Counted from the stretch's first letter, positions 1,181-63,786 are shown. The stretch is 64,000 bases of DNA from IMGVR_UViG_3300042879_006196:1-64000; one strand, 5' to 3'. Notes: generated from the sequence alone by a model not told the origin. Program-made: numbers and translations.

Positions 1181-1260
1181 ATATTCTTCTAGTATCCCCC
1201 GACATGTGGCTGTCAGATTGTGTTTTTCCAGGTTTAACATTTTTAAAGTATAATAAATGT

Positions 1261-1470
1261 ATGAAAGAAAATGATCGAAAAAATGTAAACTCGTCAATGG
1301 GCTTTTTTGGCTGGTTGACTCTCCTATTCATTGGCTTGAAGCTGACAAACTATATTACCTGGGATTGGGTATGGGTTCTTTCACCTTTGTGGGTTCCATT
1401 TACTCTTATGATTGGCATTTTGATATTGTTGAAAATTCTTGTCAAATCTGATAAAAAGACAAACAAATGA
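1261..1470 (+). CDS. Small phage membrane protein (GFFGWLTLLFIGLKL..I.W.W.WVLSPLW type)
   Basis: ATG follows the repeated promoter; two hydrophobic segments; pattern common in phages. Confidence 0.7.
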   Translation: MKENDRKNVNSSMGFFGWLTLLFIGLKLTNYITWDWVWVLSPLWVPFTLMIGILILLKILVKSDKKTNK

Positions 1471-1688
1471 ACTTCAAACAAAAATCTGTTGCTTTCATAG
1501 AGAGATATCAAAGAGAAATGTCTCCAAGAAAGCCTAAATATTGCATGTGTAAGTATACCCCATCGTGTTCGGAGTATACCAAGCAAGCTATTTCAAAACA
1601 TGGTGCTTTTATTGGCTGGATCATGGGAGCTTGGAGAATACTAAGGTGCAATCCAATGTCTAAAGGAGGCTTTGACCCTGTAAAATGA
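1467..1688 (+). CDS. yidD: Membrane protein insertion efficiency factor YidD-like
   Basis: YQR..SP, CxYTPSCSEY, AI.KHG...G...G..RILRCNP...GGFDPV motifs. Confidence 0.9.
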   Translation: MNFKQKSVAFIERYQREMSPRKPKYCMCKYTPSCSEYTKQAISKHGAFIGWIMGAWRILRCNPMSKGGFDPVK

Positions 1689-2046
1689 TAGATGTTTTTG
1701 TAAATATTTTGAATTTTATTTCACAAGCAATTGCTTGGTTATTTCTAATTTGTTGTGTATCTTATTTCATTTTATTATTTATCTTTGATGAAGAAACTCG
1801 ACTCTATTGCTGTCTTGGTGCATTAGTTGGTTTTCTTTTAAGTGATTTTTCTGATAAAGATTAAGCAAGATTTTTTTAGATATTTTTCGTATAAATAACT
1901 ATGAATATTAATTTGCAAAAAATAGATAGATTGCAAAAAGAATACGAAAGATTAATCTCTTTAGAGAGATATGATGAAGCACAAATGGTAAAATCACAAT
2001 TAGAAACTGAAAAAAATCATTCTTTGAATGAGGATCATGTCGGGCA

Positions 2047-2559
2047 ATGAAAAAAACTTTCATTTTACTTAATGAAAAAGTTCTCAAGTTCAGAGAAGCT
2101 TTGGTTATAGGTAGTGACGGTAAGCCTCTTGGTGTAATAAATACTAGAGAAGCCTTGAATATTGCAAAAAACGAGGGTTTGGATTTATTTGCTGTAAATA
2201 CAAACGTTTCTCCAGTGGTTTGCAAAATCGTTGACTATGGTCGCATGAAATATGAAGAAGATAAAAGAGAGCGAGCCAACCATAAAGCTAAACAAGAAAC
2301 TAAAGAAATAAAAATTTCCCCACGTATTCAGCAAAACGATCTCAATACTTTTACAAAAAGAGCAATTGAATTTTTGGAGCATAATGATAAAGTAAAAATC
2401 ACTTGTGTTTTCAAACATCGTGAATTAGAACACTCTGAGCTTGGATTGAATAAAATCGAGATTATGCTAAAGAATTTGGAAGATTATTGCTCTTATGAGG
2501 GCAAACCTATTCTCAACGGCAAATACATGTCCATAACTGTAAACCCAAAGAAAAAATGA
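2047..2559 (+). CDS. infC: Translation initiation factor IF-3
   Basis: NE..., GLDL..V......VCKIVDYGRMKYE, KEIKISP.I...D, FL...DKVK motifs. Confidence 0.92.
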   Translation: MKKTFILLNEKVLKFREALVIGSDGKPLGVINTREALNIAKNEGLDLFAVNTNVSPVVCKIVDYGRMKYEEDKRERANHKAKQETKEIKISPRIQQNDLNTFTKRAIEFLEHNDKVKITCVFKHRELEHSELGLNKIEIMLKNLEDYCSYEGKPILNGKYMSITVNPKKK

Positions 2560-3458
2560 TCTTAGAAGAATTACATAAATTGGGATATGATAATGTATTT
2601 CAAAAATCTAAGTATACAATGCATGTGCTTGTTAATGACAAAAATCGAGTGAGTGAATTACAAAAAATTGCACACAATCTCAATGGAGTGTATGATTCTA
2701 CACCAACAAGCAGTAGTAGTGTGGGTAAAGTTAAAGTTGATAAGTATACCATTTTTGTCAAACCTATGAATAAACAAGGTGATGATTCTTATGGAAGGCA
2801 AAACGAACAGTTTTTCGTAGAAATGCTTAATAAGTATGCCGATAAAATTGATTTTATTGTATTTAATGCCTTAAACGCAACAAAAACTATTTCTTATACT
2901 AAGCATGAAGATGTCTCGAAAACTAAAACAAAAATACGAAACAAAGCTGATGTTAAAATTATTGGTAAAGTGGATGTAAATTTAATATCCATAAAACAAG
3001 AAAATGCTCAAATTTGGGAATCTGCTGACACCTATGCAAAAACTTTGGTTAAATTGTATGTTCAAAAAATGTTGATGGATAATCTTGTTACTCTTGAATT
3101 TGAAAATGGAGTGTATAAAATTTTTCCTAATATTGCCATAGAGTGTACAGACGATGAAGCAAAAGATGTGGTTTTTGGTGATGATATTTTGAACAATGGT
3201 TTTATATGTATTAAAAATTTCGAAGAGAGTGATTTTGTTTTAGAAAAAAATATATTGTTCATCAGATGTGATCAGATTGTGTTTAATATGAAAGACCTAA
3301 AAGACTATCAAAAACCTTTTTTTTTAATCAGAAATGACAGCACTAGAAACTGTGCATATAAAGGTTTGAGAATTCTTGCATGTTATGCGAGCAGAATTAA
3401 TAAAAACGTGCATACAATTTATATGAAAGACAGAATAGATTTTCCAGGTTTAACATAA
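2556..3458 (+). CDS. Hypothetical protein, possibly a PD-(D/E)XK-type nuclease
   Basis: E...KADV...ISIK arrangement resembles a restriction-endonuclease-like core; weak. Confidence 0.45.
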   Translation: MILEELHKLGYDNVFQKSKYTMHVLVNDKNRVSELQKIAHNLNGVYDSTPTSSSSVGKVKVDKYTIFVKPMNKQGDDSYGRQNEQFFVEMLNKYADKIDFIVFNALNATKTISYTKHEDVSKTKTKIRNKADVKIIGKVDVNLISIKQENAQIWESADTYAKTLVKLYVQKMLMDNLVTLEFENGVYKIFPNIAIECTDDEAKDVVFGDDILNNGFICIKNFEESDFVLEKNILFIRCDQIVFNMKDLKDYQKPFFLIRNDSTRNCAYKGLRILACYASRINKNVHTIYMKDRIDFPGLT

Positions 3459-3474
3459 TCTTGTTATAATTATC

Positions 3475-4080
3475 ATGCAAGTATTTATGCCCTATGCGGA
3501 TTTTGAAAAAAGTGTTCAAGCACTTGATGACTCGCGGCTTAGAAAACAAGCCTTAGAATCAACTCAATTATTAGACATCATGTTCAATATACCAACAAAA
3601 ACAGGAAAACCTCGCAAAGGTTGGATGACACACCCTGCTTTGATAGCTTGGCAAAGCACTCCTGGTGCCTTGATAGAACATTTAATTCACAATGTAATTG
3701 AAATTGAAAAGAGAGGATTCAAAACTGACTACGCAACAGCTAAAATCAAGCAATATGCAACATTCACGACAAGCCTGTTACGCCCAATTTGGCTAGGTGA
3801 CGAAGCAATACACTCTTCACACAGAATCAGATTATTGCAAAAAGGCTTCGAAGAGAAATTCAAAGACAGTAAGAAAGCTGACGAAACAATAAAATGGTAT
3901 TCACAGTTTAGCTGGGATGAAATGAATCATGATGATTTTTTTAATCAAGAATATTTTTGGGCTACAAACATTACTAGCAATTCTTATGATTTGTCTCAAC
4001 GTGTAGAAAAAAATACATTGAAGCTGAAAAAGGACTTAATCGAAAAATTTGGCACAAATCCTTTTGTTTCTAGCGTATAA
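3475..4080 (+). CDS. Pyrimidine-dimer DNA glycosylase-like protein (DenV/MSMEG_6728 type)
   Basis: MQ.FMPY.DF....ALD..RL.KQ..E..Q.L, GW..HPA...W, HSSHR..LL.K. Confidence 0.8.
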   Translation: MQVFMPYADFEKSVQALDDSRLRKQALESTQLLDIMFNIPTKTGKPRKGWMTHPALIAWQSTPGALIEHLIHNVIEIEKRGFKTDYATAKIKQYATFTTSLLRPIWLGDEAIHSSHRIRLLQKGFEEKFKDSKKADETIKWYSQFSWDEMNHDDFFNQEYFWATNITSNSYDLSQRVEKNTLKLKKDLIEKFGTNPFVSSV

Positions 4081-4090
4081 TTATATTGTT

Positions 4091-4384
4091 ATGAATGTAG
4101 AAAAATTTAAAAATCTTGTCTCTTCAGGCGAAAAGTGTGTGGTTAAACTCGGTGCCTCATGGTGTTCTCCATGTAAAGCTCTAGACAAAGAAATTGATCT
4201 TCTTTTATCTGAACATCCAGAAGTGGAAACCAAAATCTTTAAAGTAGATATTGATGATAGCCCTGAGCTTGCTCAAGAACTAAATATTATGTCTGTCCCA
4301 GTTTGTGTTTTTATTGGCGACAACACTTACACAATCAAAAAAGGACTTTTGGCAAGACAGGGAATTTTCGAGTGGATTAAATAA
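4091..4384 (+). CDS. Thioredoxin
   Basis: WCSPCK active site, VDID...ELA....IMSVP. Confidence 0.9.
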   Translation: MNVEKFKNLVSSGEKCVVKLGASWCSPCKALDKEIDLLLSEHPEVETKIFKVDIDDSPELAQELNIMSVPVCVFIGDNTYTIKKGLLARQGIFEWIK

Positions 4385-4442
4385 TTTATTTATTGCCGCT
4401 TACTGAGATTGTGTTTTTAATTTTAAAAAAAGAGAAAAAAAA

Positions 4443-4850
4443 ATGAGTATGGATTTAAATTGTGTATATAAGGAAGTTTTTACGAGTAAGTTTAACAAAG
4501 AATTAACATTTGTAGATGCTTTGCATTTACCCCAACAGCCATCAGGCACTGATGCTTATTTCATTATGTACTGGTCTGATGATTGGAAAGTACAAATACC
4601 AAATAAGACGAATCAACAAATATTTGATTCTTACTGTAAATATATTGTAGAGAAAAATCCTTCTTTATTTGAGATTAGGGCTTTTGCTACAGATTTTAGT
4701 GAATCTGTAAAATTGGCATTAGGTGCATTAGACCCTGAGGATTGCAAAACTGTTTATTATAAAAGCTCTTACGATTTCTTTTTAGAAGAAGCGAATAATT
4801 TTTTTGAGAAATATGGCGGGATAGAGAATGTGGAGTTTTATGTTAATTAA
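4443..4850 (+). CDS. Hypothetical protein
   Basis: 135-aa ORF on the dominant strand. Confidence 0.7.
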   Translation: MSMDLNCVYKEVFTSKFNKELTFVDALHLPQQPSGTDAYFIMYWSDDWKVQIPNKTNQQIFDSYCKYIVEKNPSLFEIRAFATDFSESVKLALGALDPEDCKTVYYKSSYDFFLEEANNFFEKYGGIENVEFYVN

Positions 4851-4896
4851 ACTTTAACACAATCTGATACACAATCTGAAACCTGAAGACACACTA

Positions 4897-4917
4897 TCGC
4901 CTCAATTTCTGAGGCGA
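4897..4917. terminator. Hairpin between convergent transcription units
   Basis: TCGCCTCA-ATTTC-TGAGGCGA. Confidence 0.55.
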
Positions 4918-4968
4918 ATAAATCAACTAATCGCCTCAGAACACACAGCAAACACTCAGATTGTGTGT

Positions 4969-5142
4969 TTATTTTTTAAGCACTAAAAATAATGTGAGCA
5001 GAGAAAGTAAAAGCGAAGCTAAGCCAACAAATGCACCAAAGATTGTGCCGAATGTATTCCAGAAAGCCATTTTTGTAGTCCAGCCTGTGTTTACCACCAC
5101 TTGCTTTGCATTTATCTCAACATCATGTTCTTCGCTTTCCAT
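4969..5142 (-). CDS. 57-aa membrane protein
   Basis: MESEEHDVEI...FGAFVGLASLLLSLLTLFLVLKK; GGAGG Shine-Dalgarno just upstream on the - strand. Confidence 0.65.
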   Translation of the reverse strand: MESEEHDVEINAKQVVVNTGWTTKMAFWNTFGTIFGAFVGLASLLLSLLTLFLVLKK

Positions 5143-5151
5143 TCCTGCCTC

Positions 5152-5397
5152 CTAATCTGTAAACTTTTGTAATTTTTTTGCTGTATTTAATGAAGTATAC
5201 ATTTCTGGGCTCACACCCTCAGGTAAATCACCCAGCAATCCTAATTTAGAAATCAATACTGGTTTATCCTCTGTTAAAACATTGGAAAATTCACTCGGAT
5301 CAAATTCAGATTGTGTTTGTTTTGAAATTAAATCTTGTGCCATTTTCGTAACAAAAGAAATTTCAAACTGTGATTTACCTAAAGGAGTGATTTTCAT
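5152..5397 (-). CDS. Hypothetical protein
   Basis: 81-aa ORF with GAGGA upstream; middle gene of a three-gene - strand unit. Confidence 0.65.
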   Translation of the reverse strand: MKITPLGKSQFEISFVTKMAQDLISKQTQSEFDPSEFSNVLTEDKPVLISKLGLLGDLPEGVSPEMYTSLNTAKKLQKFTD

Positions 5398-5400
5398 AAG

Positions 5401-5484
5401 TTATTCCTCAAATTTTATATGACCGAACAAAGTGTTGAACATTTCAGTGTAAAAATCTATGATCGCTTTTTCAAATTTCTTCAT
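5401..5484 (-). CDS. 27-aa peptide MKKFEKAIIDFYTEMFNTLFGHIKFEE
   Basis: GGAGGT Shine-Dalgarno upstream; CGTATAAT -10-like element on the - strand near 5550. Confidence 0.5.
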   Translation of the reverse strand: MKKFEKAIIDFYTEMFNTLFGHIKFEE

Positions 5485-5625
5485 GTAGTGTATTACCTCC
5501 TATTACACAATCTTTGTGTTTTTTGAAGCACTACTTTGAGCTACATTTAATTATACGGTTTTTTAATTACAAAAACCTGTTGAAAATTATGAAACTATTG
5601 ATTAGTAACTCTCGTATAAATTATT

Positions 5626-6111
5626 ATGGCTATAATATCACTAGCGAAGGCTTTAAAAATAAAAAATCGAATCACAAGTAAAATTACATCTATCAAAAAA
5701 GAAATTTCTGCACATAATGCTTACTTGGTTGACAAAGATATTCCTGTTGATGAAATTAAACTACAAGTTGATGTAAATAATTCAATTAAAGAATTGGAAA
5801 AACTCACAGCATTTCTTGTAAAGGTCAAAGCAGAAATCAATAAAAGTAATTCGGATTCTGCTGATCTAATTTTTGAGCTTTCTGAGACTAAAGGATTGAT
5901 TGCTTTTTACGAAAACTTAGATTGTTCACAAAATTTATCGTCTTATTATAGACCACAATCTAACGATATAAAAAGGGTTCAAATTGATGTAATTCAACAA
6001 AACTTAATTGTAAAAACTTTAATCAAAAAGTCTGAAAAATTACAAGATCAGTTGGATGAATTCAATGCAGTTAAAAAAGTAGTTATTGATGATGAAATTT
6101 TAGAGCTGTAA
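5626..6111 (+). CDS. Coiled-coil protein resembling the DIP1984 family
   Basis: SLAKALK.KNR...I..., K.EIN.SN, C-terminal L...LD.FNA; recognised from memory. Confidence 0.5.
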   Translation: MAIISLAKALKIKNRITSKITSIKKEISAHNAYLVDKDIPVDEIKLQVDVNNSIKELEKLTAFLVKVKAEINKSNSDSADLIFELSETKGLIAFYENLDCSQNLSSYYRPQSNDIKRVQIDVIQQNLIVKTLIKKSEKLQDQLDEFNAVKKVVIDDEILEL

Positions 6112-6432
6112 CATTTTGCTCCTTTGGGGGCAAAGAGGCAATCTGACAGAAATATTTTATTTCTGTGAGCAAAAAAAAACACTGTATGTTGAAAAACAGT
6201 TTATTGAAAAAGAAGAAGATGTGGTCAAAATTCACGAAAAATAACCATTGTCAAAATTCATTGATATAAAACTTAAAATTGACAACTCAAACCTTTTCTG
6301 CTCTTTACAGATTGTCTCATTTTTTTATAACAAAACATCAGCAGAAGCCAAATAAACTTCAGCTAACAAAATCGCCCATCTTTTCGGAGGTGGGTTTTTT
6401 TCCAGATTTAACAATCTGAGAGTATAATTGGC

Positions 6433-7545
6433 ATGACATCATTTGATACACTTTATCACAAAGGCAAAAACGGAGAACTTCGACAATGGCGCACTTGGGC
6501 AGACGGAGATTCTATTTATACTGAGTATGGCTTAGTTAATGGAGCTTTACAAACCTCCAGAAAAACATGCACTCCTAAAAACATTGGAAAGAAAAACTTC
6601 ACCACAGCATCTGAGCAAGCTATTGCTGAGTCCAAATCTCTGCATAAATTCAAAATAGAGAGGAAATACTCAGCCACAAAAGAAGAGGCACAAATGCCTC
6701 TATTGTTACCGATGCTTGCTGGCAAATATGATGCTAAAAAACATAATTCACATTATTTTTGCCAGCCTAAGCTAGATGGTGTACGATGTATTGCCAGATG
6801 GGAAGGAGATTCTGTTGTCTTGTATTCAAGGCAAGGCAAGATTTACGATGTTAAGCACATTTCCGAGCAATTAAAAGATGTACTTGGTAAAGATGATGTC
6901 TTTGATGGTGAAATCTACATTCATGGATTGTCTTTACAATCTTTAATTTCATTGGTTAAAAAACCACAATCTGATTCATTGAAGTTAGAGTATCACATCT
7001 ATGATTATCCTGTTGTTAATGGCAATGAAGACCTCACCACTCAGGAAAGACTAGAATTACTAGCTGATATTAATATTAGTAATAAGCAAAGCTTACAGAT
7101 TGTGTGTGGGTATGATATTGGTTATGACAAAAACGCTATTACAGACTATCAAAGCAAGTTTTTAGCCAATGGCTATGAAGGTCTAATGCTTAGAGAAAAA
7201 GACAGTAAGTATCTTTGGGGTTATCGCTCTAATGATTTGCTCAAAGTAAAAACTTTCCAAGATTCTGAATTTCTTGTGGTAGACATCATTGAAGGAGAAG
7301 GAAAAATGGAAGGACATGCTGTTGTTATCTGCAAGAATGATTTAACAGATGATACTTTCAAAGTAACACCTAAAACCACAATGGAATCAAGAAAAGAAAT
7401 CTATGATAATAAATCAGATTATGTGGGAAGAATGTACACAGTAAAGTATTTCGATAGAACTGATGATTTAATTCCAAGATTTCATGTTGGTATTGCTTTT
7501 CGAGAGGATTTAGATTTTCCAGAAAATTCCACATTGCATAATTAA
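6433..7545 (+). CDS. ATP-dependent DNA ligase
   Basis: PMLA, QPKLDGVRC (motif I), FDGEIY, GYEGLMLR, LLKVK, FDRT...PRF. Confidence 0.95.
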   Translation: MTSFDTLYHKGKNGELRQWRTWADGDSIYTEYGLVNGALQTSRKTCTPKNIGKKNFTTASEQAIAESKSLHKFKIERKYSATKEEAQMPLLLPMLAGKYDAKKHNSHYFCQPKLDGVRCIARWEGDSVVLYSRQGKIYDVKHISEQLKDVLGKDDVFDGEIYIHGLSLQSLISLVKKPQSDSLKLEYHIYDYPVVNGNEDLTTQERLELLADINISNKQSLQIVCGYDIGYDKNAITDYQSKFLANGYEGLMLREKDSKYLWGYRSNDLLKVKTFQDSEFLVVDIIEGEGKMEGHAVVICKNDLTDDTFKVTPKTTMESRKEIYDNKSDYVGRMYTVKYFDRTDDLIPRFHVGIAFREDLDFPENSTLHN

Positions 7546-7617
7546 GTATATTCAGATTGTGTGGAAAAGTTTGATTCACTTTATAAAAAACTTAAATATC
7601 GAGCGTATATATAATTG

Positions 7618-8145
7618 ATGAAGAAATTAACTCAAAAACAATACAACATAGATAGGCAAGTAATTGAAATTGATAATTCCTATGGCGAAGTTTTCTTTCC
7701 AGTAAAATTGAAAGAAGCATATTCTGTTTTTGACAATCATTTAAAAGTAAATTATATTGTCAAACAAATACATTTGAACCCAATTTACAAACATACAATC
7801 AAAGTGAACGATGAAGGTTTGACAGTTTTGGAAATTAAGGGTGCCAAAAGTCCTTTTTTGGTTGAATTCATTTTAGACGTAAGTCTTGAAGAATTCAAAC
7901 GAATTGCACATCTTGCTTTGACAAAATTTGAAGAAAATTTTGAATTTGACCGTAAAAAAGACTATTTTATTTGTAAATTGTATCCTTGTAAATTAAAAGA
8001 TTTTCAGCATCGAAAAGAAATAGAAAAACACTACAAAGGAACACGTTATGACGGTCGTATTTACCAAAGCTTTTGTCAAGATACAAATTCTTTACAAAAA
8101 GAAATAATGCTTTGTGAAAATAATCCTAATCAAGCGTATATATAA
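7618..8145 (+). CDS. Hypothetical protein
   Basis: ORF behind a GCGTATATAT -10-like element. Confidence 0.7.
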   Translation: MKKLTQKQYNIDRQVIEIDNSYGEVFFPVKLKEAYSVFDNHLKVNYIVKQIHLNPIYKHTIKVNDEGLTVLEIKGAKSPFLVEFILDVSLEEFKRIAHLALTKFEENFEFDRKKDYFICKLYPCKLKDFQHRKEIEKHYKGTRYDGRIYQSFCQDTNSLQKEIMLCENNPNQAYI

Positions 8146-8148
8146 TTG

Positions 8149-9869: not shown

Positions 9870-9913
9870 TTGACATCGGGCGAGAAATCGCCCGATTCTA
9901 CCAATACTATATT

Positions 9914-56805: not shown

Positions 56806-56828
56806 CATTTTTATCGTATAATAGGTTG

Positions 56829-56904
56829 GGGTGCATAACTCAATGGCTAGAGTAACTCGCTTTTAACGAGTAAGTTCTGGGTTCGAGTCCCAGTGCACCC
56901 ACCA
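56829..56904 (+). tRNA. trnK: tRNA-Lys(UUU)
   Basis: GGGTGCA/TGCACCC acceptor stem, ACTCG-CTTTTAA-CGAGT, GGTTCGAGTCC, CCA. Confidence 0.93.
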
Positions 56905-56968
56905 ATCCCCCTCCAAGAGGGCGGCAGATCGTTTTTTCCAGGTTTAACACAATCTGATTATAATAGAT

Positions 56969-57673
56969 ATGATTCTTTATCAAGGACCAAGCGAAATAGA
57001 CGGCAAGCCAATCATTGCAATTATGACTGGTTTCAACTCCAAGTCTCAAAATTCAAAAACTGGCGAAATGCCACAAGTTTGGATTATCAGAGATGGAATT
57101 CATCCCGTAGACGCTTTGAGAACTGGTCAAGATGACAGTATCTGCGGTGATTGTATTCATAGACCAAAATATCTTGGCGATGATGCACTCAGAAAGTGGT
57201 CGAGAACGTGCTATGTCAATACAATGGCATTAAGCCAAGTTTATAAGTCATATTTAGCCAATACTTATGAATTGGTTGACCTTGATGAACTGGCAGTAAA
57301 ATTATCAGGGTTGAATATTCGTTTGGGTGCTTATGGCGACCCGGCCGCGGTTCCGATTCACATTTGGGATAAACTTTGTGCACATTGCAAATCTACTGGC
57401 TATACGCACCAATGGAAACGCTGTGATTCACGTTACGCAGAATATTGCATGGCAAGTTGTGATTCAATTCTTGACGTTGTGCAGTCAACCGCGAAAGGCT
57501 ATCGTGTCTATTTTGTGCAAACTGATAACCAAGTAAAGCAAGTAAGCGATATAAAACTTGCTTGGTGTCCAGCAAGCAAAGAAATGGGCAGAGTTACCAC
57601 GTGTTCAAAGTGTATGGCTTGCTCAGGCACTCGCTCAAACCTTCATTCAAATATCAGCATTATGCTCCACTAG
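56969..57673 (+). CDS. Cys-rich phage protein (GP88-related or radical-SAM-like)
   Basis: N.KTG.M.Q.W, SICGDC.HR, CYV, RLG.YGDPAAVP, TGYTHQW, CPA...C..C..C. Confidence 0.65.
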   Translation: MILYQGPSEIDGKPIIAIMTGFNSKSQNSKTGEMPQVWIIRDGIHPVDALRTGQDDSICGDCIHRPKYLGDDALRKWSRTCYVNTMALSQVYKSYLANTYELVDLDELAVKLSGLNIRLGAYGDPAAVPIHIWDKLCAHCKSTGYTHQWKRCDSRYAEYCMASCDSILDVVQSTAKGYRVYFVQTDNQVKQVSDIKLAWCPASKEMGRVTTCSKCMACSGTRSNLHSNISIMLH

Positions 57674-57761
57674 GGCTTCAAAACGCCCCACAGAGCATTC
57701 CCCCTCCAAAGGGGCGGCAGACCATTTTTTCCAGGTTTAACACAATCTGATTATAATAGAT

Positions 57762-58079
57762 ATGGGAAATATTCTTGACGTAACAGTAAGAGATTATACA
57801 ATCCGCTATCATAAGCTCTACGAAGAAGTAGGCACTTTAACAGATGTAGTCATATCAGATGACTATGATAGGATTGATTTGTCATTGGAAGACGATAGCT
57901 TCAACTGTGAAGACCCGTTCGCCCTGATAGAATGGATTTTTAAGAGAACTAAATACAATTCCGAACTAACTGAACTACTTTTTTTTCATTACAACGTGGC
58001 ACAAGGTGTGAGAATTCACGGTAAGTACTATGTTTTCGAGGATTGGAAAGAACTCTACGAAAAACATATTAGTGATTAA
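57762..58079 (+). CDS. Hypothetical protein
   Basis: Cassette ORF. Confidence 0.7.
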   Translation: MGNILDVTVRDYTIRYHKLYEEVGTLTDVVISDDYDRIDLSLEDDSFNCEDPFALIEWIFKRTKYNSELTELLFFHYNVAQGVRIHGKYYVFEDWKELYEKHISD

Positions 58080-58158
58080 ATGATTCACTAATAAATCCCC
58101 CTCCAAAGGGGAGGCAGATTGTGTTTTCCAGGTTTAACACAATCTGATTATAATAGAT

Positions 58159-58299
58159 ATGACAGTACAAGAACTGATAGAAAAGTTGCAAGAGATTGAA
58201 GACAAAAGCAAAATTTGCATGCTTAATGACCCAGAGGGTACATTAGTGAATGAAATTACATGGATTGGTGAGTGGGAGTGTGTTGTAGAAATCAGATAA
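58159..58299 (+). CDS. MTVxELIE-family small protein
   Basis: MTVQELIEKLQEIEDKSKIC; 46 aa. Confidence 0.7.
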   Translation: MTVQELIEKLQEIEDKSKICMLNDPEGTLVNEITWIGEWECVVEIR

Positions 58300-58401
58300 A
58301 ATATTCAGACAAGTATTGCTGAGTGTTCTTTTAGCTTTCCCCTCCAAAGGGGAGGCAGATTGTGTTTTCCAGGTTTAACACAATCTGATTATAATAGATA
58401 T

Positions 58402-58668
58402 ATGAGCGAACTTCATGAAATTAAAAACAAATTTGACGTGGGTGATATTTATCTCTACTATACGCCAGTAGATAACCCATATAAGTTCCGCAAAAGTGAA
58501 ATTACCTATGACGAGCGCAAGGAAACTTTTGACTTTCTTAAGGCAAATGACAAACTCCCAGATTATGTCCAAGATGTTTGGTATGCCCCATCAAGTGGAG
58601 GAGCTAAAAAGCTTTCATTATCCACTGTTAAATACACTGGTGCTTTCATCACTGGAATGCCAGTGTAA
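58402..58668 (+). CDS. Hypothetical protein
   Basis: Cassette ORF. Confidence 0.7.
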   Translation: MSELHEIKNKFDVGDIYLYYTPVDNPYKFRKSEITYDERKETFDFLKANDKLPDYVQDVWYAPSSGGAKKLSLSTVKYTGAFITGMPV

Positions 58669-58728
58669 TCCCCCAAAGGGGAGGCAGATTGTGTTTTCCA
58701 GGTTTAACACAATCTGATTATAATAGAT

Positions 58729-58896
58729 ATGACTATGACAGTACAAGAACTAATTGAACAACTACAAAAGATTGGTGATAAAAGCAAAATTTGCTTAGTT
58801 GATGACGGAGACGGCGGGGCATTAGGTGAAATTAAATCTGTTTATGATGCACAATATGTAGAAATCAACATAAGATATTCATACAAGTATTGCTGA
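58729..58896 (+). CDS. MTVxELIE-family small protein
   Basis: MTMTVQELIEQLQKIGDKSKIC; 55 aa. Confidence 0.7.
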   Translation: MTMTVQELIEQLQKIGDKSKICLVDDGDGGALGEIKSVYDAQYVEINIRYSYKYC

Positions 58897-59171
58897 GTGT
58901 TCTTTTAGCTTCCCCCTCCAAAGGGGAGGCAGATTGTGTTTTCCAGGTTTAACATAATCTGATTATAATAGATATATGGAAGATGAAGCATATTTCTTTT
59001 GGAAAAATTTGGCAGATCTATTGGAGCTTGAATTGATCGGGTGGAGTAATTTTGCAACTGGAACTTTCAGGGACGCCTCACTTAATACAAGCGTTCAAAT
59101 TCAATATTGGTTTGCTAAGAGAATACAGGATAAAATCATAGAATTATGAATTCTGAAGGTATAATAGATAT

Positions 59172-59648
59172 ATGAGCCATCTTTACGAGGATTTAGATTC
59201 AGCTTTCTCCGCACTCTATGATTATAGTTGTGAGGGCGGTTCTTACGGGGTTGATGAAGATGATAATTCCAAAAGCCACCATTATAAAAGTGTCGATGGC
59301 ATGATTCTTATGGAATTGAGCAGGGATTGCTTGGTTTCAACAATTACCGTAGGTGATGAATTCCGTGTAGTGCGTAACCTTGACTGGGAAGACTGGTATC
59401 ACTTTGTAACTGGTGACGAAGAAAGTTTCATTGCATTTGTTTCTGAGTTGATTCCACCGCCTAAAAATACATGGCATCATACTTGCGAAAAATGCTACAA
59501 GCAAAACTCTAGTGTTTCAATGATTTATGACCCATTTGAGTATGATATAAATAACCGCGAGGTGGTACTGGCAACATTGTGTTCAGATTGTTTTAGTGAG
59601 GACTATGGTCTTCAACAAGAATTACACAATCTTGCAATGGAAGTGTAA
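59172..59648 (+). CDS. Hypothetical protein with C-terminal CxxC pairs
   Basis: TATAATAGATAT-ATG start; CEKC...CSDC. Confidence 0.7.
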   Translation: MSHLYEDLDSAFSALYDYSCEGGSYGVDEDDNSKSHHYKSVDGMILMELSRDCLVSTITVGDEFRVVRNLDWEDWYHFVTGDEESFIAFVSELIPPPKNTWHHTCEKCYKQNSSVSMIYDPFEYDINNREVVLATLCSDCFSEDYGLQQELHNLAMEV

Positions 59649-59711
59649 TTCCCCTCCAAAGGGGAGGCAGATTGTGTTTTCCAGGTTTAACACAATCTGA
59701 TTATAATAGAT

Positions 59712-59945
59712 ATGACAGTACAAGAACTAATTGAACAACTACAAAAGATTGAAGACAAAAGCAGAGAGTGCATAATAGATGATGGTGGCGGCGGTGCATT
59801 TTATGATGTTGAATCTGTTTTTACTGAGAGAGAGTATGTACTAATCTCAAGATATTCAAGCGAGTATAATAATTCAATATATTCAAACGAGTATAATAAT
59901 TCAACAGTAGTAATGTGTGAAGAATATTCAGACAAGTATTGCTGA
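59712..59945 (+). CDS. MTVxELIE-family small protein
   Basis: MTVQELIEQLQKIEDKSREC. Confidence 0.75.
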   Translation: MTVQELIEQLQKIEDKSRECIIDDGGGGAFYDVESVFTEREYVLISRYSSEYNNSIYSNEYNNSTVVMCEEYSDKYC

Positions 59946-60020
59946 ATGTTCTTTTAGCTTTCCCCTCCAAAAGGGAGGCAGATTGTTTTTTCCAGGTTTA
60001 ACATTTCCTGATTATAATAG

Positions 60021-60410
60021 ATGTAAGAACATTGAAAAGAGAATAAGAATCGCCCGAATTAAGTATCGGAAAGAGGAGCTGACCCAACAGTGAACTCTAA
60101 AAAACGCTGGGTAATTGGGTAAGACGAGCCACACGTCATAAAGAAAGTGGTGAAGCGGGAAACAAATGAAAGTGAAAGGCTTTCTGGGTTTTTAACTTGG
60201 CATCCGTGTATAAGGGGTATGCTCCCACCGAGGCGATTTTTAATCTTATATCTCTTACAGAATAATGTAAAAAGTTTAGGGGACGCCCTATAGGGACTCA
60301 CGTAACCCGAAATACGTGGTTGAACAATCATGTTCCGATGAGGCAAGTACATCGTTAAATCAATCTGCTAGGGAGGTGGGCTAATTACCCACCCCCGCAT
60401 GTTTTTAAGA
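60021..60410 (+). ncRNA. Candidate structured ncRNA cassette of about 390 nt
   Basis: Full promoter module but no ORF; hairpins CACGTA/TACGTG, CGATG/CATCG, GTGGG/CCCAC, TTACA/TGTAA. Confidence 0.5.
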
Positions 60411-60474
60411 TTCCCCCTCCAAAGGGCAGGCAGATCGTGTTTTCCAGGTTTAACATTTTCGAGTTATAATAGGT

Positions 60475-60741
60475 ATGAGCAGACACTCAGCACAAACAAA
60501 AGATGGAAGAAGCATGGTTATCGGTTTTGATGCCCCCTTAAGCGAATACTTTATTCAGGTATATGGGGACAATGATGAGTTGGTGGCTGACTTTTCTTCA
60601 TCAGGAATGTCAATGGTAAAAATGCACCCACCAATGTCAAATTCAAAAATTCTGGAAACTATTCAGTCAATCATGAGCGATGATGACCAGAAGCGACTGG
60701 CTCCTCAGATTGAACTACTATGCTTGGATTTACCTTTCTGA
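60475..60741 (+). CDS. Hypothetical protein
   Basis: Cassette ORF. Confidence 0.7.
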   Translation: MSRHSAQTKDGRSMVIGFDAPLSEYFIQVYGDNDELVADFSSSGMSMVKMHPPMSNSKILETIQSIMSDDDQKRLAPQIELLCLDLPF

Positions 60742-60810
60742 GCAGATTCCCCCTCCAAAGGGGCGGCAGCCCGTTTTTTCCAGGTTTAACACAATCTGAT
60801 TATAATAGAT

Positions 60811-61209
60811 ATGAGCGAAAAAAACCTAGTTTTTCATGTTTTCGGATTTAACATCATTCAGCGACCAGTTCACAGTTACCTTGATGGCAGAGCGGGAAAG
60901 CTAAGAAGACTTCCACAAATACAAGTAGGTGAAACTGTTAGTTATTATGGGCATTCTCACACAGAGTACGGAAGATGTATAGAAGATGATATTTTTGACA
61001 CAGTAGACGAGGCTTTGGAAGTAGCTAAAACCCGTTTAGAGCATGAAAAATTGTCTTTGGCAGAAAAAATCCAATACCTACAAGAAAAATTAGCAGAGTG
61101 TGAAAATCAAGAAATAAAAATAAAACTTTATGAAGACATTCTGAAGGAAACAGCAATTAAAGAAATGAAAAGACTTGCCAAGGAGAATAACCTTGAAGTT
61201 TCATTTTAA
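60811..61209 (+). CDS. Hypothetical protein
   Basis: Cassette ORF. Confidence 0.7.
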   Translation: MSEKNLVFHVFGFNIIQRPVHSYLDGRAGKLRRLPQIQVGETVSYYGHSHTEYGRCIEDDIFDTVDEALEVAKTRLEHEKLSLAEKIQYLQEKLAECENQEIKIKLYEDILKETAIKEMKRLAKENNLEVSF

Positions 61210-61223
61210 TTAAAAATAAAAAT

Positions 61224-61303
61224 TGGGCATGTTGCATTGTTAAGAATATTTGGAAAATCACCTTTTAGGTTTAAGTGCGGGTTCAAATCCCACTGCTCCA
61301 CCA
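61224..61303 (+). pseudogene. Degenerate tRNA-like element
   Basis: GCGGGTTCAAATCCCAC T-arm and GCTCCACCA 3' end; no recognisable D-arm or anticodon arm. Confidence 0.55.
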
Positions 61304-61366
61304 ATTCCCCCTCCAAGAGGGAGTCAGCCCGTTTTTTCCAGGTTTAACATAATCTGATTATAATAG

Positions 61367-61750
61367 ATGTACCTACAAGGTAACATCAAGGAAAAAAAGA
61401 TGCCAAAATCAGCCCTATATCAATCAGCAATCACAAATCGAAAACTCCTCACTGACCACCTCACGTTAATCGAGGAATATCTTGAAGCAGGAGAAGCGAC
61501 CACAGAAATTTACTTCTATGGTGCGAACAACTCCATCATCAGAAAATACACAAAAACCTCTAAGTGGTCAACATCAATTGGCAAGCAGAGAGTCAGAACA
61601 AGCCATGAGATTTTTGTCTCCATTAATACAGGCTTTCTTCCTCGTGGCACAAAGCGAATGAAGGTGAAAAGCCCATTTGTTGAAAATGAAACCAAGACTG
61701 TTTTGAGTAGTATGCCAGTTACAGTTCAATGCCAATCAATTGCCATCTAG
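61367..61750 (+). CDS. Hypothetical protein
   Basis: Cassette ORF; alternative start at MPKS. Confidence 0.65.
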   Translation: MYLQGNIKEKKMPKSALYQSAITNRKLLTDHLTLIEEYLEAGEATTEIYFYGANNSIIRKYTKTSKWSTSIGKQRVRTSHEIFVSINTGFLPRGTKRMKVKSPFVENETKTVLSSMPVTVQCQSIAI

Positions 61751-61829
61751 TAAGATGGCAATTGATTCCCCCTCCAAAGGGGAGGCAGAAAATTTTTTCC
61801 AGGTTTAACATTTCCTGATTATAATAGAT

Positions 61830-62099
61830 ATGGGTAAGAACCATAAAATCAAAGAAACCTTCGAAGTAGGTAGAAACTTCATCTCAATCTTCCCTGAAGA
61901 ATCCTTCCTTGAGCAACTTGTTCTTGAGGGTGATGTTCTCAAGTTCAAGATGAAATCTGGTGCAAGTGTTTACAGCACTACCATCACTGATACCATGAAG
62001 CGAGAATTGCTCGCTGTTGCCAGAGAAGGTGGCTCAATCGGCACCTTTTACAATACAAGGCTTCGACCCTTGCCTATAACAAAGTCAGATTCTTTCTGA
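61830..62099 (+). CDS. KTSC-like domain protein
   Basis: SFL......L...KSG..VY........GGSIG.FYN..LR. Confidence 0.55.
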   Translation: MGKNHKIKETFEVGRNFISIFPEESFLEQLVLEGDVLKFKMKSGASVYSTTITDTMKRELLAVAREGGSIGTFYNTRLRPLPITKSDSF

Positions 62100-62164
62100 A
62101 TGATAGGGGAATAAAATCCCCTATCTAAAATTTTCCAGGTTTAACAAAACCTGATTATAATGAA

Positions 62165-62304
62165 TGTAAGAACGAAAGTTCTACAAGGTGACGACTCTGC
62201 ACCTTGAGGGGAACGGAATTGCCCCTTGAAACCAGTAGCTCCTGTCAAATGGAGTGACGACATCTATTAAGTGCTTTGGGAATAGTTTCTAGAAAGAGGC
62301 TATT
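62165..62304 (+). ncRNA. Candidate small structured RNA cassette of about 140 nt
   Basis: Promoter but no ORF; AGAAC-GAAA-GTTCT, CAAGGTG/CACCTTG, AGGGG/CCCCT, CTCC/GGAG and GAATAG/CTATTC stems in series. Confidence 0.6.
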
Positions 62305-62366
62305 CCCCCTCCAAGAGCCCCGCCGCCCGCTTTTTCCAGGTTTAACACAATCTGATTATAATAGAT

Positions 62367-62765
62367 ATGACATTAGAACAACTGCAACAAATCTTTCCAG
62401 GTGCTACGGCTGATACTTGGCATCAGCACCCAAACGGTGGTGGATGGGTGCAAAATACTGCAAAGGTATATGAAACTGCTTGGGTTGGCAAAGATGCCGT
62501 AGTGTATGGGGATGCTGTGGTGCTTTGGAATTCTTCTATATCGGGGAATGCTAGGGTGTTGGCTGACGGGTATGGGTCTGGAGGAGAAGAAATGACCTTA
62601 GAAAAAGCGTTGGAGCGGATTGAGTTCCTTGAGAACGCTCTGAACGGAGCGATTGGTTCCTGCATTAAGGATGAGGAATGTGATTTCACGAAAAAGCCAG
62701 AACTGGTGGAATACATTAAGCAAAACTGGTTGAATGCATTAATCAAAGAAATAGATAATGAATAA
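62367..62765 (+). CDS. Protein with a short beta-helix-like repeat fused to an MTLE.AL.RIEFLENAL module
   Basis: HPNGGGWV.NTA.V...AWVG.DAVVYGDA; second half similar to 62758..62964. Confidence 0.65.
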   Translation: MTLEQLQQIFPGATADTWHQHPNGGGWVQNTAKVYETAWVGKDAVVYGDAVVLWNSSISGNARVLADGYGSGGEEMTLEKALERIEFLENALNGAIGSCIKDEECDFTKKPELVEYIKQNWLNALIKEIDNE

Positions 62766-62964
62766 CATGACATTAGAAGAGGCATTGAAACGGATTGAGT
62801 TCCTTGAGAACGCTTTAGACCAAGCCATTGACTTGGCAGTAATCCGAACTTGGGATTTAGGATATATTGTAGCAGGTTATGGTGGTGATAATGCAACTTA
62901 TGACGTTAGAGAGCCACAAAGAGCTTTTCCTGCTCTAGTGGAATACTTGGAGGGGAAGGAGTGA
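62758..62964 (+). CDS. Hypothetical protein
   Basis: MTLEEALKRIEFLENAL. Confidence 0.7.
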   Translation: MNNMTLEEALKRIEFLENALDQAIDLAVIRTWDLGYIVAGYGGDNATYDVREPQRAFPALVEYLEGKE

Positions 62965-63029
62965 AAACCCCCTCCAAGAGTTTCGCTGCCCGCTTTTTCC
63001 AGGTTTAACACAATCTGATTATAATAGAT

Positions 63030-63248
63030 GTGATGTTACCTTACGAATATCTCAACGAAGTGCTTCAAAAGGGCGTTTGCCCAAATTGCAACAAGCCCAG
63101 CAAGTCTATTGACTTCCAATTCTCATATGGCGTGTACGCTGGTGTGATGTGCACTAAATGTGCCATCAATGGCTACAGAGACTCCTGCGGTCACAAGCGA
63201 CCAATGGGCACTAGAGCCGAGTACGAGTCCTTTGGAGAGGATTATTAA
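63030..63248 (+). CDS. Small Zn-finger-like protein (GTG start)
   Basis: CPNC...CTKC. Confidence 0.65.
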   Translation: MMLPYEYLNEVLQKGVCPNCNKPSKSIDFQFSYGVYAGVMCTKCAINGYRDSCGHKRPMGTRAEYESFGEDY

Positions 63249-63311
63249 TCCCCCTCCAAAGGGGCGGCAGATCGTTTTTTCCAGGTTTAACACAATCTGA
63301 TTATAATAGAT

Positions 63312-63515
63312 ATGAGCAGTGATACAAAAGAATCGTTGGTTGTACTATCTCTCCTCGGAGGATTTGTTCCGTTGGTCTTTGCAATAGTGTGTCTCCCCAA
63401 GTATACGGAAGCCTCACTTTATTGGCTGAAGTTCGCCATGACCGCTTCAATTGTGTGTCCCGCAGTTGGATTTACAATTGACAGAGTGTGGAGAAAAGTC
63501 ACAAAAAATGACTAG
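63312..63515 (+). CDS. Small membrane protein
   Basis: Two hydrophobic segments. Confidence 0.7.
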   Translation: MSSDTKESLVVLSLLGGFVPLVFAIVCLPKYTEASLYWLKFAMTASIVCPAVGFTIDRVWRKVTKND

Positions 63516-63723
63516 CATCTATGAAGAACTCAAAAACGCTGGTGTGGAAATCTCCAACTGGCAAAGTGACCTTTATTGTCCAAAAAATGCCCAGACTATC
63601 CCAATAGTCAAAAAGTATGAAAAAGAACACTATATTTCTACTTTCAAAAACTTAAACGACGGTCTCACTTGGTATGATGTTGCTTTTGCTTACGACCCTT
63701 ACTGGTCAAAATTAGGAAAGTAA
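63508..63723 (+). CDS. Hypothetical protein
   Basis: Overlapping ORF; SDLY.P, AFAYDPYW. Confidence 0.65.
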   Translation: MTSIYEELKNAGVEISNWQSDLYCPKNAQTIPIVKKYEKEHYISTFKNLNDGLTWYDVAFAYDPYWSKLGK

Positions 63724-63786
63724 TTCCCCTCCAAGGGGGCGGCAGACCATTTTTTCCAGGTTTAACACAATCTGATTATAATAAAT

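What the first reader, a model, noticed from the sequence alone, without database searches (positions are those of the whole stretch)
1214..63780. One 10-mer, CAGATTGTGT, links the array head, the promoter spacer and the origin-like repeats
Seen: CAGATTGTGT is inside most array heads (e.g. 14489-14498, encoding T-D-C-V). Its reverse complement ACACAATCTG fills the -35/-10 spacer of the commonest promoter variant. It also recurs in the 46-bp tandem repeat and at scattered sites, including inside or at the ends of genes (about 4858-4877, 4957, 5308, 7553, 20272, 33383-33505, 34086, 35926, 37259, 43665, 44110, 45374). Inference: it is a binding site for a phage protein (repressor/activator, nucleoid or partition factor). 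The array would then double as a lattice of about 80 co-oriented operators at about 170-bp spacing, acting as a titration sink or centromere-like region, so the D-C-V conservation may be selected at DNA level.
Basis: partly seen in the sequence, partly recalled or inferred. Interest (0 to 1): 0.82.

Follow-up and report, generated by a model that had tools for sequence, protein, structure and literature searches.

The report
Promoter word reused in gene-array heads
A 10-letter DNA word that sits inside the promoters of a 347-kb lake-water phage, and of a distant relative, is also kept letter for letter at the start of 63 of 83 tiny tandem genes, so it is most likely a protein docking site that the gene arrays copy many times.

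Summary
CAGATTGTGT occurs 127 times in 64 kb, against 0.22 expected. There are 64 copies in the arrays (63 of 83 heads), 36 in terminator-promoter cassettes and 27 elsewhere. After masking all repeats, its 9-mer core is still the most enriched word (38 against 0.55). It also beats codon-preserving shuffles.

New findings:
- The word is the commonest spacer of 62 near-identical promoters (TTTCCA, 18 nt, TATAAT, 4 nt, ATG). It is flipped in three of them.
- It sits at the same promoter position in a relative whose rIIA-like protein is only 36% identical. So it is an old functional promoter element, not a local repeat relic.
- The arrays are real, translationally coupled mini-genes. Each encodes a single helix related to the repeat tract of DUF6745 proteins.
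- The array heads are conserved at nucleotide level. Third codon positions are as fixed as the others, and variants are 8 synonymous against 19 non-synonymous.
- Read on the other strand, a head equals the promoter module without a -35 box.

The best reading is a binding site for a promoter-controlling factor, with the arrays as a large cluster of decoy sites. The sink or centromere role remains untested. No binding protein and no transcript start data could be found.

The parts
14479..18082 (+). Array 1: 22 tandem mini-ORFs. Each starts ATGATTAATA-CAGATTGTGT-GRAR (M-I-N-T-D-C-V-E/K). It lies downstream of a motif-bearing promoter at 14079 and a DUF3307 gene.
22165..27430 (+). Array 2: tandem mini-ORFs. 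The first unit follows promoter 22132 directly and is the only head with synonymous ATC/AAC codons.
28133..33178 (+). Array 3: tandem mini-ORFs. It includes a 15-nt internal head duplication at 31316-31345.
14479..14502 (+). Example head. ATGATTAA gives a stop in both other frames for the preceding ORF. The 10-mer is at 14489-14498. Read on the - strand, a typical head is YTYC-ACACAATCTG-TATTAAT, which is the promoter module without a -35 box.
58097..58161 (+). Typical terminator-promoter cassette: hairpin 58097-58114, + copy of the 10-mer 58115-58124 (also the T-rich tail), -35-like TTTCCA 58125-58130, ACACAATCTG 58137-58146, TATAAT 58149-58154, ATG 58159. The two copies can form an 11-bp stem with the loop TTCCAGGTTT.
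1226..63790 (+). 62 co-oriented cassettes of the form TTCCAG[G/A/C]TTTAA, 11 nt, TATAAT, (4 nt in 45 of 62), ATG. The spacer is CACAATCTGAT in 23, has one mismatch in 8, is flipped in 3 and is something else in 28. The cassettes are densest from 44 to 64 kb and continue past the window end (L001).
37411..37447 (+). Promoter with the 10-mer flipped in the spacer (CAGATTGTGT at 37423-37432). The spacer length is the same, 11 nt.
44343..44380 (+). Second promoter with a flipped 10-mer (44355-44364).
51658..51700 (+). Third promoter with a flipped 10-mer (51670-51679).
33180..33349 (+). 46-bp tandem repeat, 3.7 copies. Each unit has two adjacent AGATTGTG cores (8 cores in all).
33382..33506 (.). 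Nested inverted repeats: two ACACAATCTG (33382, 33412) facing two CAGATTGTGT (33472, 33497). As a single strand they fold into nested stems (z -3.6).
4857..4966 (.). Intergenic cluster: two tandem ACACAATCTG 12 nt apart (4857, 4869) and one CAGATTGTGT (4957).
43665..43674 (-). The 10-mer forms the spacer between GGAGG and the ATG at a gene junction. A paralogous junction lies at 44111-44120.
20475..21569 (+). DUF6745 gene between arrays 1 and 2. In other organisms this family carries the (xQVW)n tract from which the array bodies appear to derive. This copy lacks the tract.

Best explanation
The 10-mer (minimal core AGATTGTGT; in promoter orientation ACACAATCTG) is a short double-strand DNA element that belongs to the promoter architecture of this phage lineage.

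Position. It lies between a -35-like TTTCCA and a TATAAT box that is followed 4 nt later by the ATG. That places it at about -22 to -13 relative to the start codon.

Likely role. I think it is the docking site of a trans-acting protein, phage-encoded or host, that controls this promoter class. The protein could be a repressor or timer, or a specificity factor.

Extra copies. These would be further binding sites:
- an inverted partner between the terminator hairpin and the -35 box, two helical turns away, which also serves as the T-rich terminator tail;
- a dense locus at 33.2-33.5 kb with 8 tandem cores and 2+2 nested inverted copies;
- about 30-40 dispersed copies;
- 63 exact copies (81 with at most one mismatch) in the heads of 83 mini-genes, in the opposite orientation.

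The arrays. They are genuinely coding. They encode translationally coupled single-helix peptides derived from the DUF6745 tetrapeptide tract. Their 24-nt junction is held at nucleotide level for two reasons. ATGATTAA supplies a stop in both other frames plus the start codon. ACAGATTGTGTGRAR is, on the other strand, the promoter module YTYC-ACACAATCTG followed by an AT-rich box, without a -35 box. So whatever binds the promoters should also load onto the arrays.

Shown: the counts, positions, orientation flips, nucleotide-level conservation and conservation in relatives.

Inferred: that a protein binds, and what binding does at the arrays (decoy or titration, roadblock or silencing, or organising the DNA).
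For: - Enrichment is 127 against 0.22 expected. The core is still the top word after masking all repeats, 38 against 0.55.
- It exceeds codon-preserving shuffles both in ordinary genes (14 against 2.0) and in the arrays (66 against 42.6).
- It is concentrated in non-coding DNA: 16 of 38 sites in about 12% of the sequence.
- Intragenic copies occur in all frames and both orientations.
- There are 62 promoters with an invariant 11-nt spacer between TTTAA and TATAAT: 23 exact, 8 with one mismatch, 3 flipped at the same position. The cassettes score as sigma-70-like promoters (TTTCCA, 18 nt, TATAAT) and as hairpin terminators in an independent scan.
- Relative L028 (rIIA 36% identical) has promoters TTTCAAyyTTTCA-CACAATCTG-NNG-TATAAT-N5-ATG. 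12 of about 15 carry the motif, and the 10-mer occurs 10 times against 0.06 expected.
- Relative L024 (39% identical) has ACACAATC 14 times against 0.91 expected.
- A second promoter class elsewhere in the same genome (L016) reads TTCC-ACACAATCTG-AGCG-TATAAAA.
- Heads read on the - strand give TTCC, CTCC, TTTC or CTTC, then ACACAATCTG, then TATTAATC. This is the same 14-mer as in L016 and L028 promoters.
- Third codon positions in the head are as conserved as the others. Head variants are 8 synonymous against 19 non-synonymous. Codon 8 is R-A-R in 66 of 83 heads.
- Paired sites exist: 10 cassettes have inverted copies 22 bp centre to centre, and nested inverted repeats lie at 33382-33506.
Against: - No binding protein was identified. 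Pfam and PHROGs scans of 84 non-array proteins gave no HTH, RHH or ParB-type hit.
- 28 of 62 promoters lack the word, and spacer types cluster by region and co-vary with cassette subtype. Descent and local homogenisation would produce the same pattern.
- The 10-mer is not a good palindrome.
- Spacing to the -10 box varies between classes and phages (2, 3 or 4 nt).
- Relatives L025 and L027 show little (L025) or no clear (L027) enrichment.
- Array heads could owe part of their uniformity to unequal crossing-over, because units are gained and lost between strains.
- No transcript 5' ends could be obtained, so even the promoter assignment rests on sequence alone.
Confidence: 0.5

Rival explanations
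1. Direct polymerase contact. The word is a spacer or upstream -10 element read by the RNA polymerase holoenzyme itself (host sigma or a phage sigma-like subunit), not by a separate factor. The array heads would then be -35-less promoter-like modules that attract polymerase or fire weak antisense transcripts.
For: - The word has a fixed place just upstream of TATAAT in three promoter classes and in two distant phages.
- The rc-head equals the 14-nt promoter module followed by TATTAAT.
Against: - The element works in both orientations at the same place in three promoters. That is hard to reconcile with a directional polymerase contact.
- Its TG is 2, 3 or 4 nt from the -10 hexamer, not the 1 nt of an extended -10.
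- Half of the otherwise identical promoters lack it.
- The heads do not score as sigma-70-like promoters on the - strand, and the array has fewer promoter-like sites than shuffles, 8 against 13.
Confidence: 0.18
2. No function of its own. The word is inherited baggage of mobile terminator-promoter cassettes (PeSL-like) and of an array that grows by unequal crossing-over. Identity between contexts arose by recombination or chance, and homogenisation keeps it uniform.
For: - Spacer variants co-vary with hairpin and -35 subtype and cluster by region.
- The arrays differ between strains by unit gain, loss and chimeras, while the flanks are 95-99% identical.
- Contigs of other samples show joints between cassettes (weak evidence).
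Against: - The word is conserved at the same promoter position in a phage with 36% rIIA identity, where the rest of the upstream promoter has diverged.
- It is strongly enriched outside all repeats and above codon-preserving shuffles.
- Orientation is flipped with spacer length preserved.
- The match is confined to a sharp 9-10 nt with different flanks in each context.
Confidence: 0.12
3. RNA-level element. In read-through transcripts the two copies form a stem, which could be a processing or stability site. Alternatively the word near start codons tunes translation, possibly together with the phage-encoded IF3. Array-head mRNA (CAGAUUGUGU at +10 to +19) could pair with ACACAAUCUG near other start codons.
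For: - The heads sit at a fixed distance from the AUG.
- Inverted copies give an 11-bp stem, z -4.3.
- In L016, L024 and the window the word also lies directly after or just before start codons: ATG-ACACAATCTG, ATG-AACACAATC, GGAGG-ACACAATCTG-ATG.
- The phage encodes IF3.
Against: - In cassettes the word lies upstream of the -10 box, so it is absent from transcripts that start there.
- Both orientations occupy equivalent positions.
- Dispersed copies show no clear strand bias, 23 on + and 15 on -.
- The tandem and nested repeats at 33.2-33.5 kb look like a DNA locus.
Confidence: 0.12
4. The arrays act as a titration sink or centromere-like lattice of about 80 operators, and the 33.2-33.5 kb repeats are an origin or partition site.
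For: - There are 63 exact and 18 one-mismatch co-oriented sites at a median spacing of 167 bp.
- The heads show nucleotide-level conservation.
- A tandem plus inverted repeat locus is present.
- From established knowledge, precedents for titration loci exist: P1 incA, E. coli datA and F sopC.
Against: - No partition or replication-initiator gene was detected next to the repeats or anywhere in the window.
- Site spacing is irregular (74-253 bp).
- The arrays are under selection to stay translatable, so they are not merely DNA lattices.
- None of this is testable with these tools.
Confidence: 0.15

Closest known systems
PeSLs: composite terminator/early-promoter cassettes of T4-type phages (PMC2839356, PMC4122927)
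   Same: A stem-loop lies directly upstream of a sigma-70-like promoter. Dozens of near-identical copies flank small orphan genes. The phage carries an rIIA-like gene, and its relatives carry rIIA plus rIIB.
   Different: The promoter consensus is different (TTTCCA, 18 nt, TATAAT). The ATG follows the -10 box by only 4 nt. The spacer carries a discrete 10-mer that also occurs outside the cassettes, in both orientations and in gene-array heads. A role in gene shuffling was not shown here.
Operators that overlap core promoters, and phage global early-gene regulators (lambda/P22 operators, phi29 p4/p6, SPO1 TF1). Named from established knowledge, not tested here.
   Same: A short conserved sequence inside or next to the -35/-10 interval of many promoters, sometimes as paired inverted sites on the same face of the helix (22 bp apart).
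   Different: No regulator was identified. The site is barely palindromic. There are hundreds of copies per genome, including 63 inside coding array heads.
Titration or handcuffing loci and repeat centromeres (P1 incA, E. coli datA, F sopC, R1 parC). Named from established knowledge.
   Same: Clusters of co-oriented copies of the same short site that also occurs at a regulated promoter. A 46-bp tandem repeat resembles the sopC type of layout.
   Different: No Rep or Par gene was found. The large clusters here are inside translated genes. The spacing is irregular.
T4 MotA box (middle-promoter element read by a phage activator). Named from established knowledge.
   Same: A phage-lineage-specific promoter word combined with a host-type -10 box.
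   Different: The MotA box replaces the -35 box at about -30. Here a -35-like box is kept and the word lies at about -22 to -13. No MotA or AsiA homologue was seen in the window.
Central tetrapeptide-repeat tract of DUF6745 proteins
   Same: The array bodies match the (D/N)(Q/K)V(W/R/E/G) repeat tract of long DUF6745 proteins. 1438 proteins hit at E<=0.001, and the top hits are 300-600 aa with 4-7 matched stretches. A DUF6745 gene sits between arrays 1 and 2.
   Different: Here the tract is cut into 83 separate 25-83 aa ORFs by a 24-nt stop-start junction that carries the promoter word. The units lack the DUF6745 domain itself.

Membership tests
PeSL-type composite terminator-promoter cassette | Stem-loop immediately upstream of the promoter | tested here: met
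   The hairpin CCCCTCC-AAA-GGGGAGG lies 9-13 nt upstream of the -35-like box in 30 of 62 cassettes. Others carry a GCCCGA-type element.
PeSL-type composite terminator-promoter cassette | Sigma-70-like -35 and -10 boxes at about 17 nt | tested here: met
   TTTCCA, 18 nt, TATAAT, matching 10 of 12 positions in most cassettes.
PeSL-type composite terminator-promoter cassette | Copies flank insertions, deletions and swaps between close relatives | tested here: inconclusive
   The only evidence is contig joints between cassettes at 59708/58939 in one sample. No strain contig covering the cassette-rich part was obtained.
PeSL-type composite terminator-promoter cassette | Host phage is a T4-type myovirus | not tested
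   An rIIA-like gene is present, and relatives carry rIIA plus rIIB. Structural genes were not examined.
Operator / transcription-factor site | A protein binds it sequence-specifically | not testable with these tools
   No candidate was found by Pfam or PHROGs.
Operator / transcription-factor site | Overlaps the core promoter at a fixed position | tested here: met
   The word is at the same spacer position in 23 exact, 8 one-mismatch and 3 flipped promoters out of 62.
Operator / transcription-factor site | Conserved in relatives while the surrounding sequence diverges | tested here: met
   In L028 (rIIA 36% identical), 12 of about 15 promoters carry CACAATCTG upstream of TATAAT.
Operator / transcription-factor site | Dyad symmetry or paired sites | tested here: inconclusive
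   The 10-mer itself is only weakly symmetric. Paired inverted copies occur in 10 cassettes and at 33382-33506.
Extended -10 (TGn) element | TG exactly one base upstream of the -10 hexamer | tested here: not met
   The TG of the word is 2 nt (window), 3 nt (L028) or 4 nt (L016 class) from the hexamer.
Iteron origin / repeat centromere | Tandem direct repeats carrying the binding core | tested here: met
   A 46-bp repeat of 3.7 copies has two cores per unit.
Iteron origin / repeat centromere | Adjacent initiator or partition gene | tested here: not met
   Neighbouring ORFs at 33947-35101 and all 84 non-array proteins gave no Rep, ParA, ParB or ParR hit. Small novel proteins could have been missed.
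T4 MotA-box promoter | Element centred near -30 that replaces the -35 box | tested here: not met
   The element lies at about -22 to -13 and a -35-like box is retained.
DUF6745 repeat tract (array bodies) | Profile similarity to the tetrapeptide tract of DUF6745 proteins | tested here: met
DUF6745 repeat tract (array bodies) | Presence of the DUF6745 domain | tested here: not met
   Array units gave no Pfam hit.

The most novel reading that the evidence does not exclude
The 83 mini-gene heads are a built-in lattice of decoy promoter modules. On this reading, a translated tandem gene family has stop-start punctuation that is selected as DNA to load the same factor (or polymerase) that reads the phage's early promoters. 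The array would then act as a timer, sink or chromosome-organising region while still encoding peptides. A distant relative may do something similar: L028 carries a near-copy of the word (CAGATCGTG) 12 times inside the 69-bp coding repeats of one gene.
Probability: 0.17. Interest if true: 0.85.

Novelty: new variant of a known kind. Interest (0 to 1): 0.62.

Why it matters
It gives a concrete, testable cis-element for transcription control in an uncultured lineage of freshwater jumbo phages. One 10-bp probe could be used to fish out the regulator. It also shows a case where the most conserved 'amino-acid motif' of a large gene family is probably conserved as DNA. That matters for how tandem phage gene families and their conserved N-termini are interpreted. 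If the arrays really are decoy lattices, this would be a new way for a virus to build a regulatory sink inside coding sequence.

Tried and rejected
- Relatives in GenBank phages: none for the array, and only weak NAMPT-type hits for the flank.
- IMG/VR scans for the promoter 22-mer, the head 20-mer, the promoter with a free spacer, and one protein: all returned only the source contig.
- Degenerate metagenome scan for MINTDCV[EK]: only strains with identical codons were found, so the synonymous test in relatives was impossible. All small hits of the exhaustive profile search also start MINTDCV.
- RNA evidence: the only 'RNA' runs are kept as contigs, are probably DNA and carry no read ends. No transcript starts were obtained.
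- DNA-binding candidates: none by Pfam or PHROGs.
- Rfam: only tRNAs.
- Bacterial genome scan for the word plus TATAAT: 120 or more single hits spread over many phyla, as chance would give, and no host clue.
- Heads as sigma-70-type antisense promoters: not supported.
- Resemblance to DnaA, IHF, CRP, LexA or Fur boxes was considered from memory and dropped, because none fits better than 6-7 of 9 positions.
- A Chi-like hotspot was dropped because orientation is mixed between contexts.
- Assembly artefact was dropped because the arrays recur in independent JGI, ENA and Logan assemblies.

Full report
**Source and setting.** The window is positions 1-64000 of IMG/VR contig IMGVR_UViG_3300042879_006196. 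This is a 347-kb phage contig found in many lake-water metagenomes. Nothing close exists in GenBank phages. Almost all genes are on the + strand. Recognisable genes include DNA ligase, NAMPT, a Mom-like protein, an rIIA-like ATPase, DUF6745, ArdC, RlaP, IF3 and five tRNAs.

- CAGATTGTGT occurs 127 times, against 0.22 expected by chance.
- 64 copies are in three arrays, 36 in promoter cassettes and 27 elsewhere.
- The common core is AGATTGTGT. Outside the arrays the consensus is T-C-AGATTGTGT-T.
- With arrays, cassettes and the 46-bp tandem masked, the core is still the most enriched 9-mer in the remaining 44 kb. It occurs 38 times against 0.55 expected, and no unrelated word comes close.
- 16 of these 38 copies lie in the roughly 12% of sequence that is non-coding.
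- Intragenic copies occur in all three frames and both orientations.
- A shuffle that keeps every protein and each gene's codon set gives 2.0 +/- 1.1 copies in ordinary genes, against 14 observed.

**The arrays are real genes.**
- 83 heads define 83 ORFs of 8-83 aa (all but one of 25 aa or more). Nearly every ORF runs exactly to the next head.
- The ORF frame has no stop in 14 kb. The other two forward frames have 438 and 506.
- Junctions are of two kinds. The previous ORF ends in the TGA or in the TAA of ATGATTAA (37 and 36 cases).
- Successive units are never in the same frame.
- An AAGGTG Shine-Dalgarno-like sequence precedes most heads.
- AlphaFold predicts one long helix (pLDDT 89).
- An exhaustive profile search shows that the bodies are the (D/N)(Q/K)V(W/R/E/G) tetrapeptide tract found in the middle of long DUF6745 proteins. 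A DUF6745 gene without the tract lies between arrays 1 and 2.
- Codon use in the bodies is far from the rest of the genome: CAG 83% against 16%, and GTG 78% against 24%.
- A close strain (flanks 95-99% identical) differs in the arrays by unit gain, loss and chimeras, with only 65-85% identity.
- In 34 matched unit pairs, pN/pS in the body is about 0.8.

**The head is conserved as nucleotides.**
- Information content is about 1.6-2.0 bits at every position from the A of ATG to position +19, with no dip at third codon positions. The third positions of Thr4, Asp5 and Cys6 score 2.0, 1.91 and 1.91.
- Variant heads carry 8 synonymous and 19 non-synonymous changes in codons 4-7. That ratio is about what unselected mutation would give.
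- Thr is ACA in 79 of 79 heads, but in only 29% of Thr codons in the bodies.
- Codon 8 is GAA, GAG, AAA or AAG in 66 of 83 heads. E and K have opposite charges, but as DNA the pattern is simply R-A-R.
- ATGATTAA is explained by the overlapping stops. The one head with no upstream unit (22165) is also the one that uses ATC and AAC.
- The remainder, ACAGATTGTGTGRAR, is not explained by coding.
- Concerted evolution remains a confounder. The test in divergent relatives could not be run, because all relatives found share the same codons.

**The promoters.**
- 62 co-oriented cassettes read TTCCAG[G/A/C]TTTAA, 11 nt, TATAAT. The ATG follows 4 nt later in 45 of them.
- An independent scan calls them sigma-70-like (TTTCCA, 18 nt, TATAAT). 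It also calls the upstream CCCCTCC-AAA-GGGGAGG hairpins terminators.
- This layout is that of the PeSL terminator-promoter cassettes of T4-type phages (PMC4122927).
- The spacer is CACAATCTGAT in 23 cassettes, has one mismatch in 8, and is something else in 28. In three it is the reverse complement, CAGATTGTGTT or CAGATTGTGTG, at the same place and with the same length.
- In ten cassettes a + copy lies between the hairpin and the -35-like box. It forms an 11-bp inverted repeat around TTCCAGGTTT and supplies the T-rich terminator tail.
- Because the -10 box is only 4 nt from the ATG, transcripts from these promoters would have little or no leader. This is an inference. No 5'-end data could be obtained.

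**Conservation in distant relatives is the key new evidence.**
- Homologues of the rIIA-like protein at 36-42% identity led to contigs with shared gene content: ligase, rIIA/rIIB, NAMPT, RyR and, in L028, IF3.
- In L028 the promoters read TTTCAAyyTTTCA-CACAATCTG-NNG-TATAAT-N5-ATG. 12 of about 15 carry the word, and the exact 10-mer occurs 10 times against 0.06 expected.
- In L024, ACACAATC occurs 14 times against 0.91 expected. Three of these come directly after a start codon. The promoter spacer there is a diverged AAATCTTG version.
- L025 and L027 show little (L025) or no clear (L027) enrichment.
- Elsewhere in the same 347-kb genome, a second promoter type reads TTCC-ACACAATCTG-AGCG-TATAAAA.
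- The word is therefore an old element of this lineage's promoters, kept while the upstream promoter half diverged. That argues against a mere repeat relic.

**Link between heads and promoters.**
- Read on the - strand, the heads are TTCC, CTCC, TTTC or CTTC, then ACACAATCTG, then TATTAATC.
- The first 14 nt equal the module in L016 and L028 promoters.
- An AT-rich box follows at once, instead of after 2-4 nt, and there is no -35 box.
- The heads do not score as sigma-70-like promoters.
- So the heads look like promoter modules without the parts needed to fire. Any factor that reads the module in promoters should also bind the arrays.

**Other clusters.**
- 33180-33349 is a 46-bp repeat of 3.7 copies with two cores per unit.
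- 33382-33506 holds two copies facing two copies, which fold as nested stems.
- 4857-4966 holds three copies.
- At 43665 and 44111 the word is the spacer between GGAGG and ATG.
- Neither a replication-initiator nor a partition gene was detected nearby.

**Verdict.** The most likely explanation (about 0.5) is a protein-binding DNA element of the lineage's promoter class, with the array heads as a large set of extra sites. Four rivals remain:
- direct polymerase contact (0.18);
- no function beyond descent and homogenisation (0.12);
- an RNA-level role (0.12);

The finding is a new variant of known kinds (promoter operators and PeSL-like cassettes), joined to an unusual coding array.

Noticed in passing
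window 2047-2559 (+); also L028 2379-2891: The phage encodes a full translation initiation factor IF3, with both the N and C domains. A relative with 36% rIIA identity encodes one too. This is of interest because most early genes here appear to have almost no leader, and IF3 is known to discriminate against leaderless mRNAs.
   Followed up: partly
window, 62 cassettes from 1226 to 63790: The -10 box is followed by the ATG after 4 nt in 45 of 62 cassettes (5 nt in L028, 4 nt in L024). This implies leaderless or near-leaderless early mRNAs across the lineage.
   Followed up: partly
window 33626-33945 (+): About 300 nt have no convincing ORF. The region is preceded by GAGATTGTGT-ATCG-TATAAT and ends in a GC hairpin plus a T-run. 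The fold z-score is -2.7 and there is no Rfam match. It may be a small RNA.
   Followed up: partly
window 14479-33178 (the three arrays): GC skew is up to +0.6 and codons ending in G dominate (CAG, GTG, GAG, AAG), unlike the rest of the genome. The array bodies derive from the DUF6745 tetrapeptide tract.
   Followed up: partly
window 31316-31345; L008 5144-5190: A 15-nt piece of the head (AATACAGATTGTGTT, encoding N-T-D-C-V) is duplicated in tandem inside one unit. The window has two copies and a close strain has three.
   Followed up: no
L028 15638-16975: A 445-aa protein is made of 23-aa repeats (LSEEFIEKYADRVDW..IS..QK). The DNA of 12 of these repeats contains CAGATCGTG, mostly extended to CAGATCGTGTGGATTGG. 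That is one mismatch from the word, in the same codon phase as in the array heads.
   Followed up: no
L016 10378-11760 (same contig, outside the window): A second promoter type, TTCC-ACACAATCTG-AGCG-TATAAAATAAT-ATG, occurs in front of four consecutive genes.
   Followed up: partly
window 58939-59708: Contigs from another sample join 59708 back to 58939, and 58410 to 59181. The first pair of end points lies in two cassettes; the second lies just after the ATGs at 58402 and 59172. This would fit cassette-mediated duplication or deletion, but the support is weak.
   Followed up: no
window 38549, 58159, 58729, 59712: Several small genes that follow cassettes begin with the same peptide (M-T-V-Q-E-L-I-E...). 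They form a dispersed paralogous family of early genes.
   Followed up: no
window 18063-20204; L024, L025, L027, L028: The 713-aa HATPase protein is rIIA-like. In relatives it sits next to an rIIB gene. L024 also carries three TnpB/IS605-type genes.
   Followed up: partly
window 48877-48946: The tRNA-Asp/Asn/Thr cluster is preceded by a cassette and then by TAGATTGTG-TATAAT, 8 nt before the tRNA 5' end.
   Followed up: no
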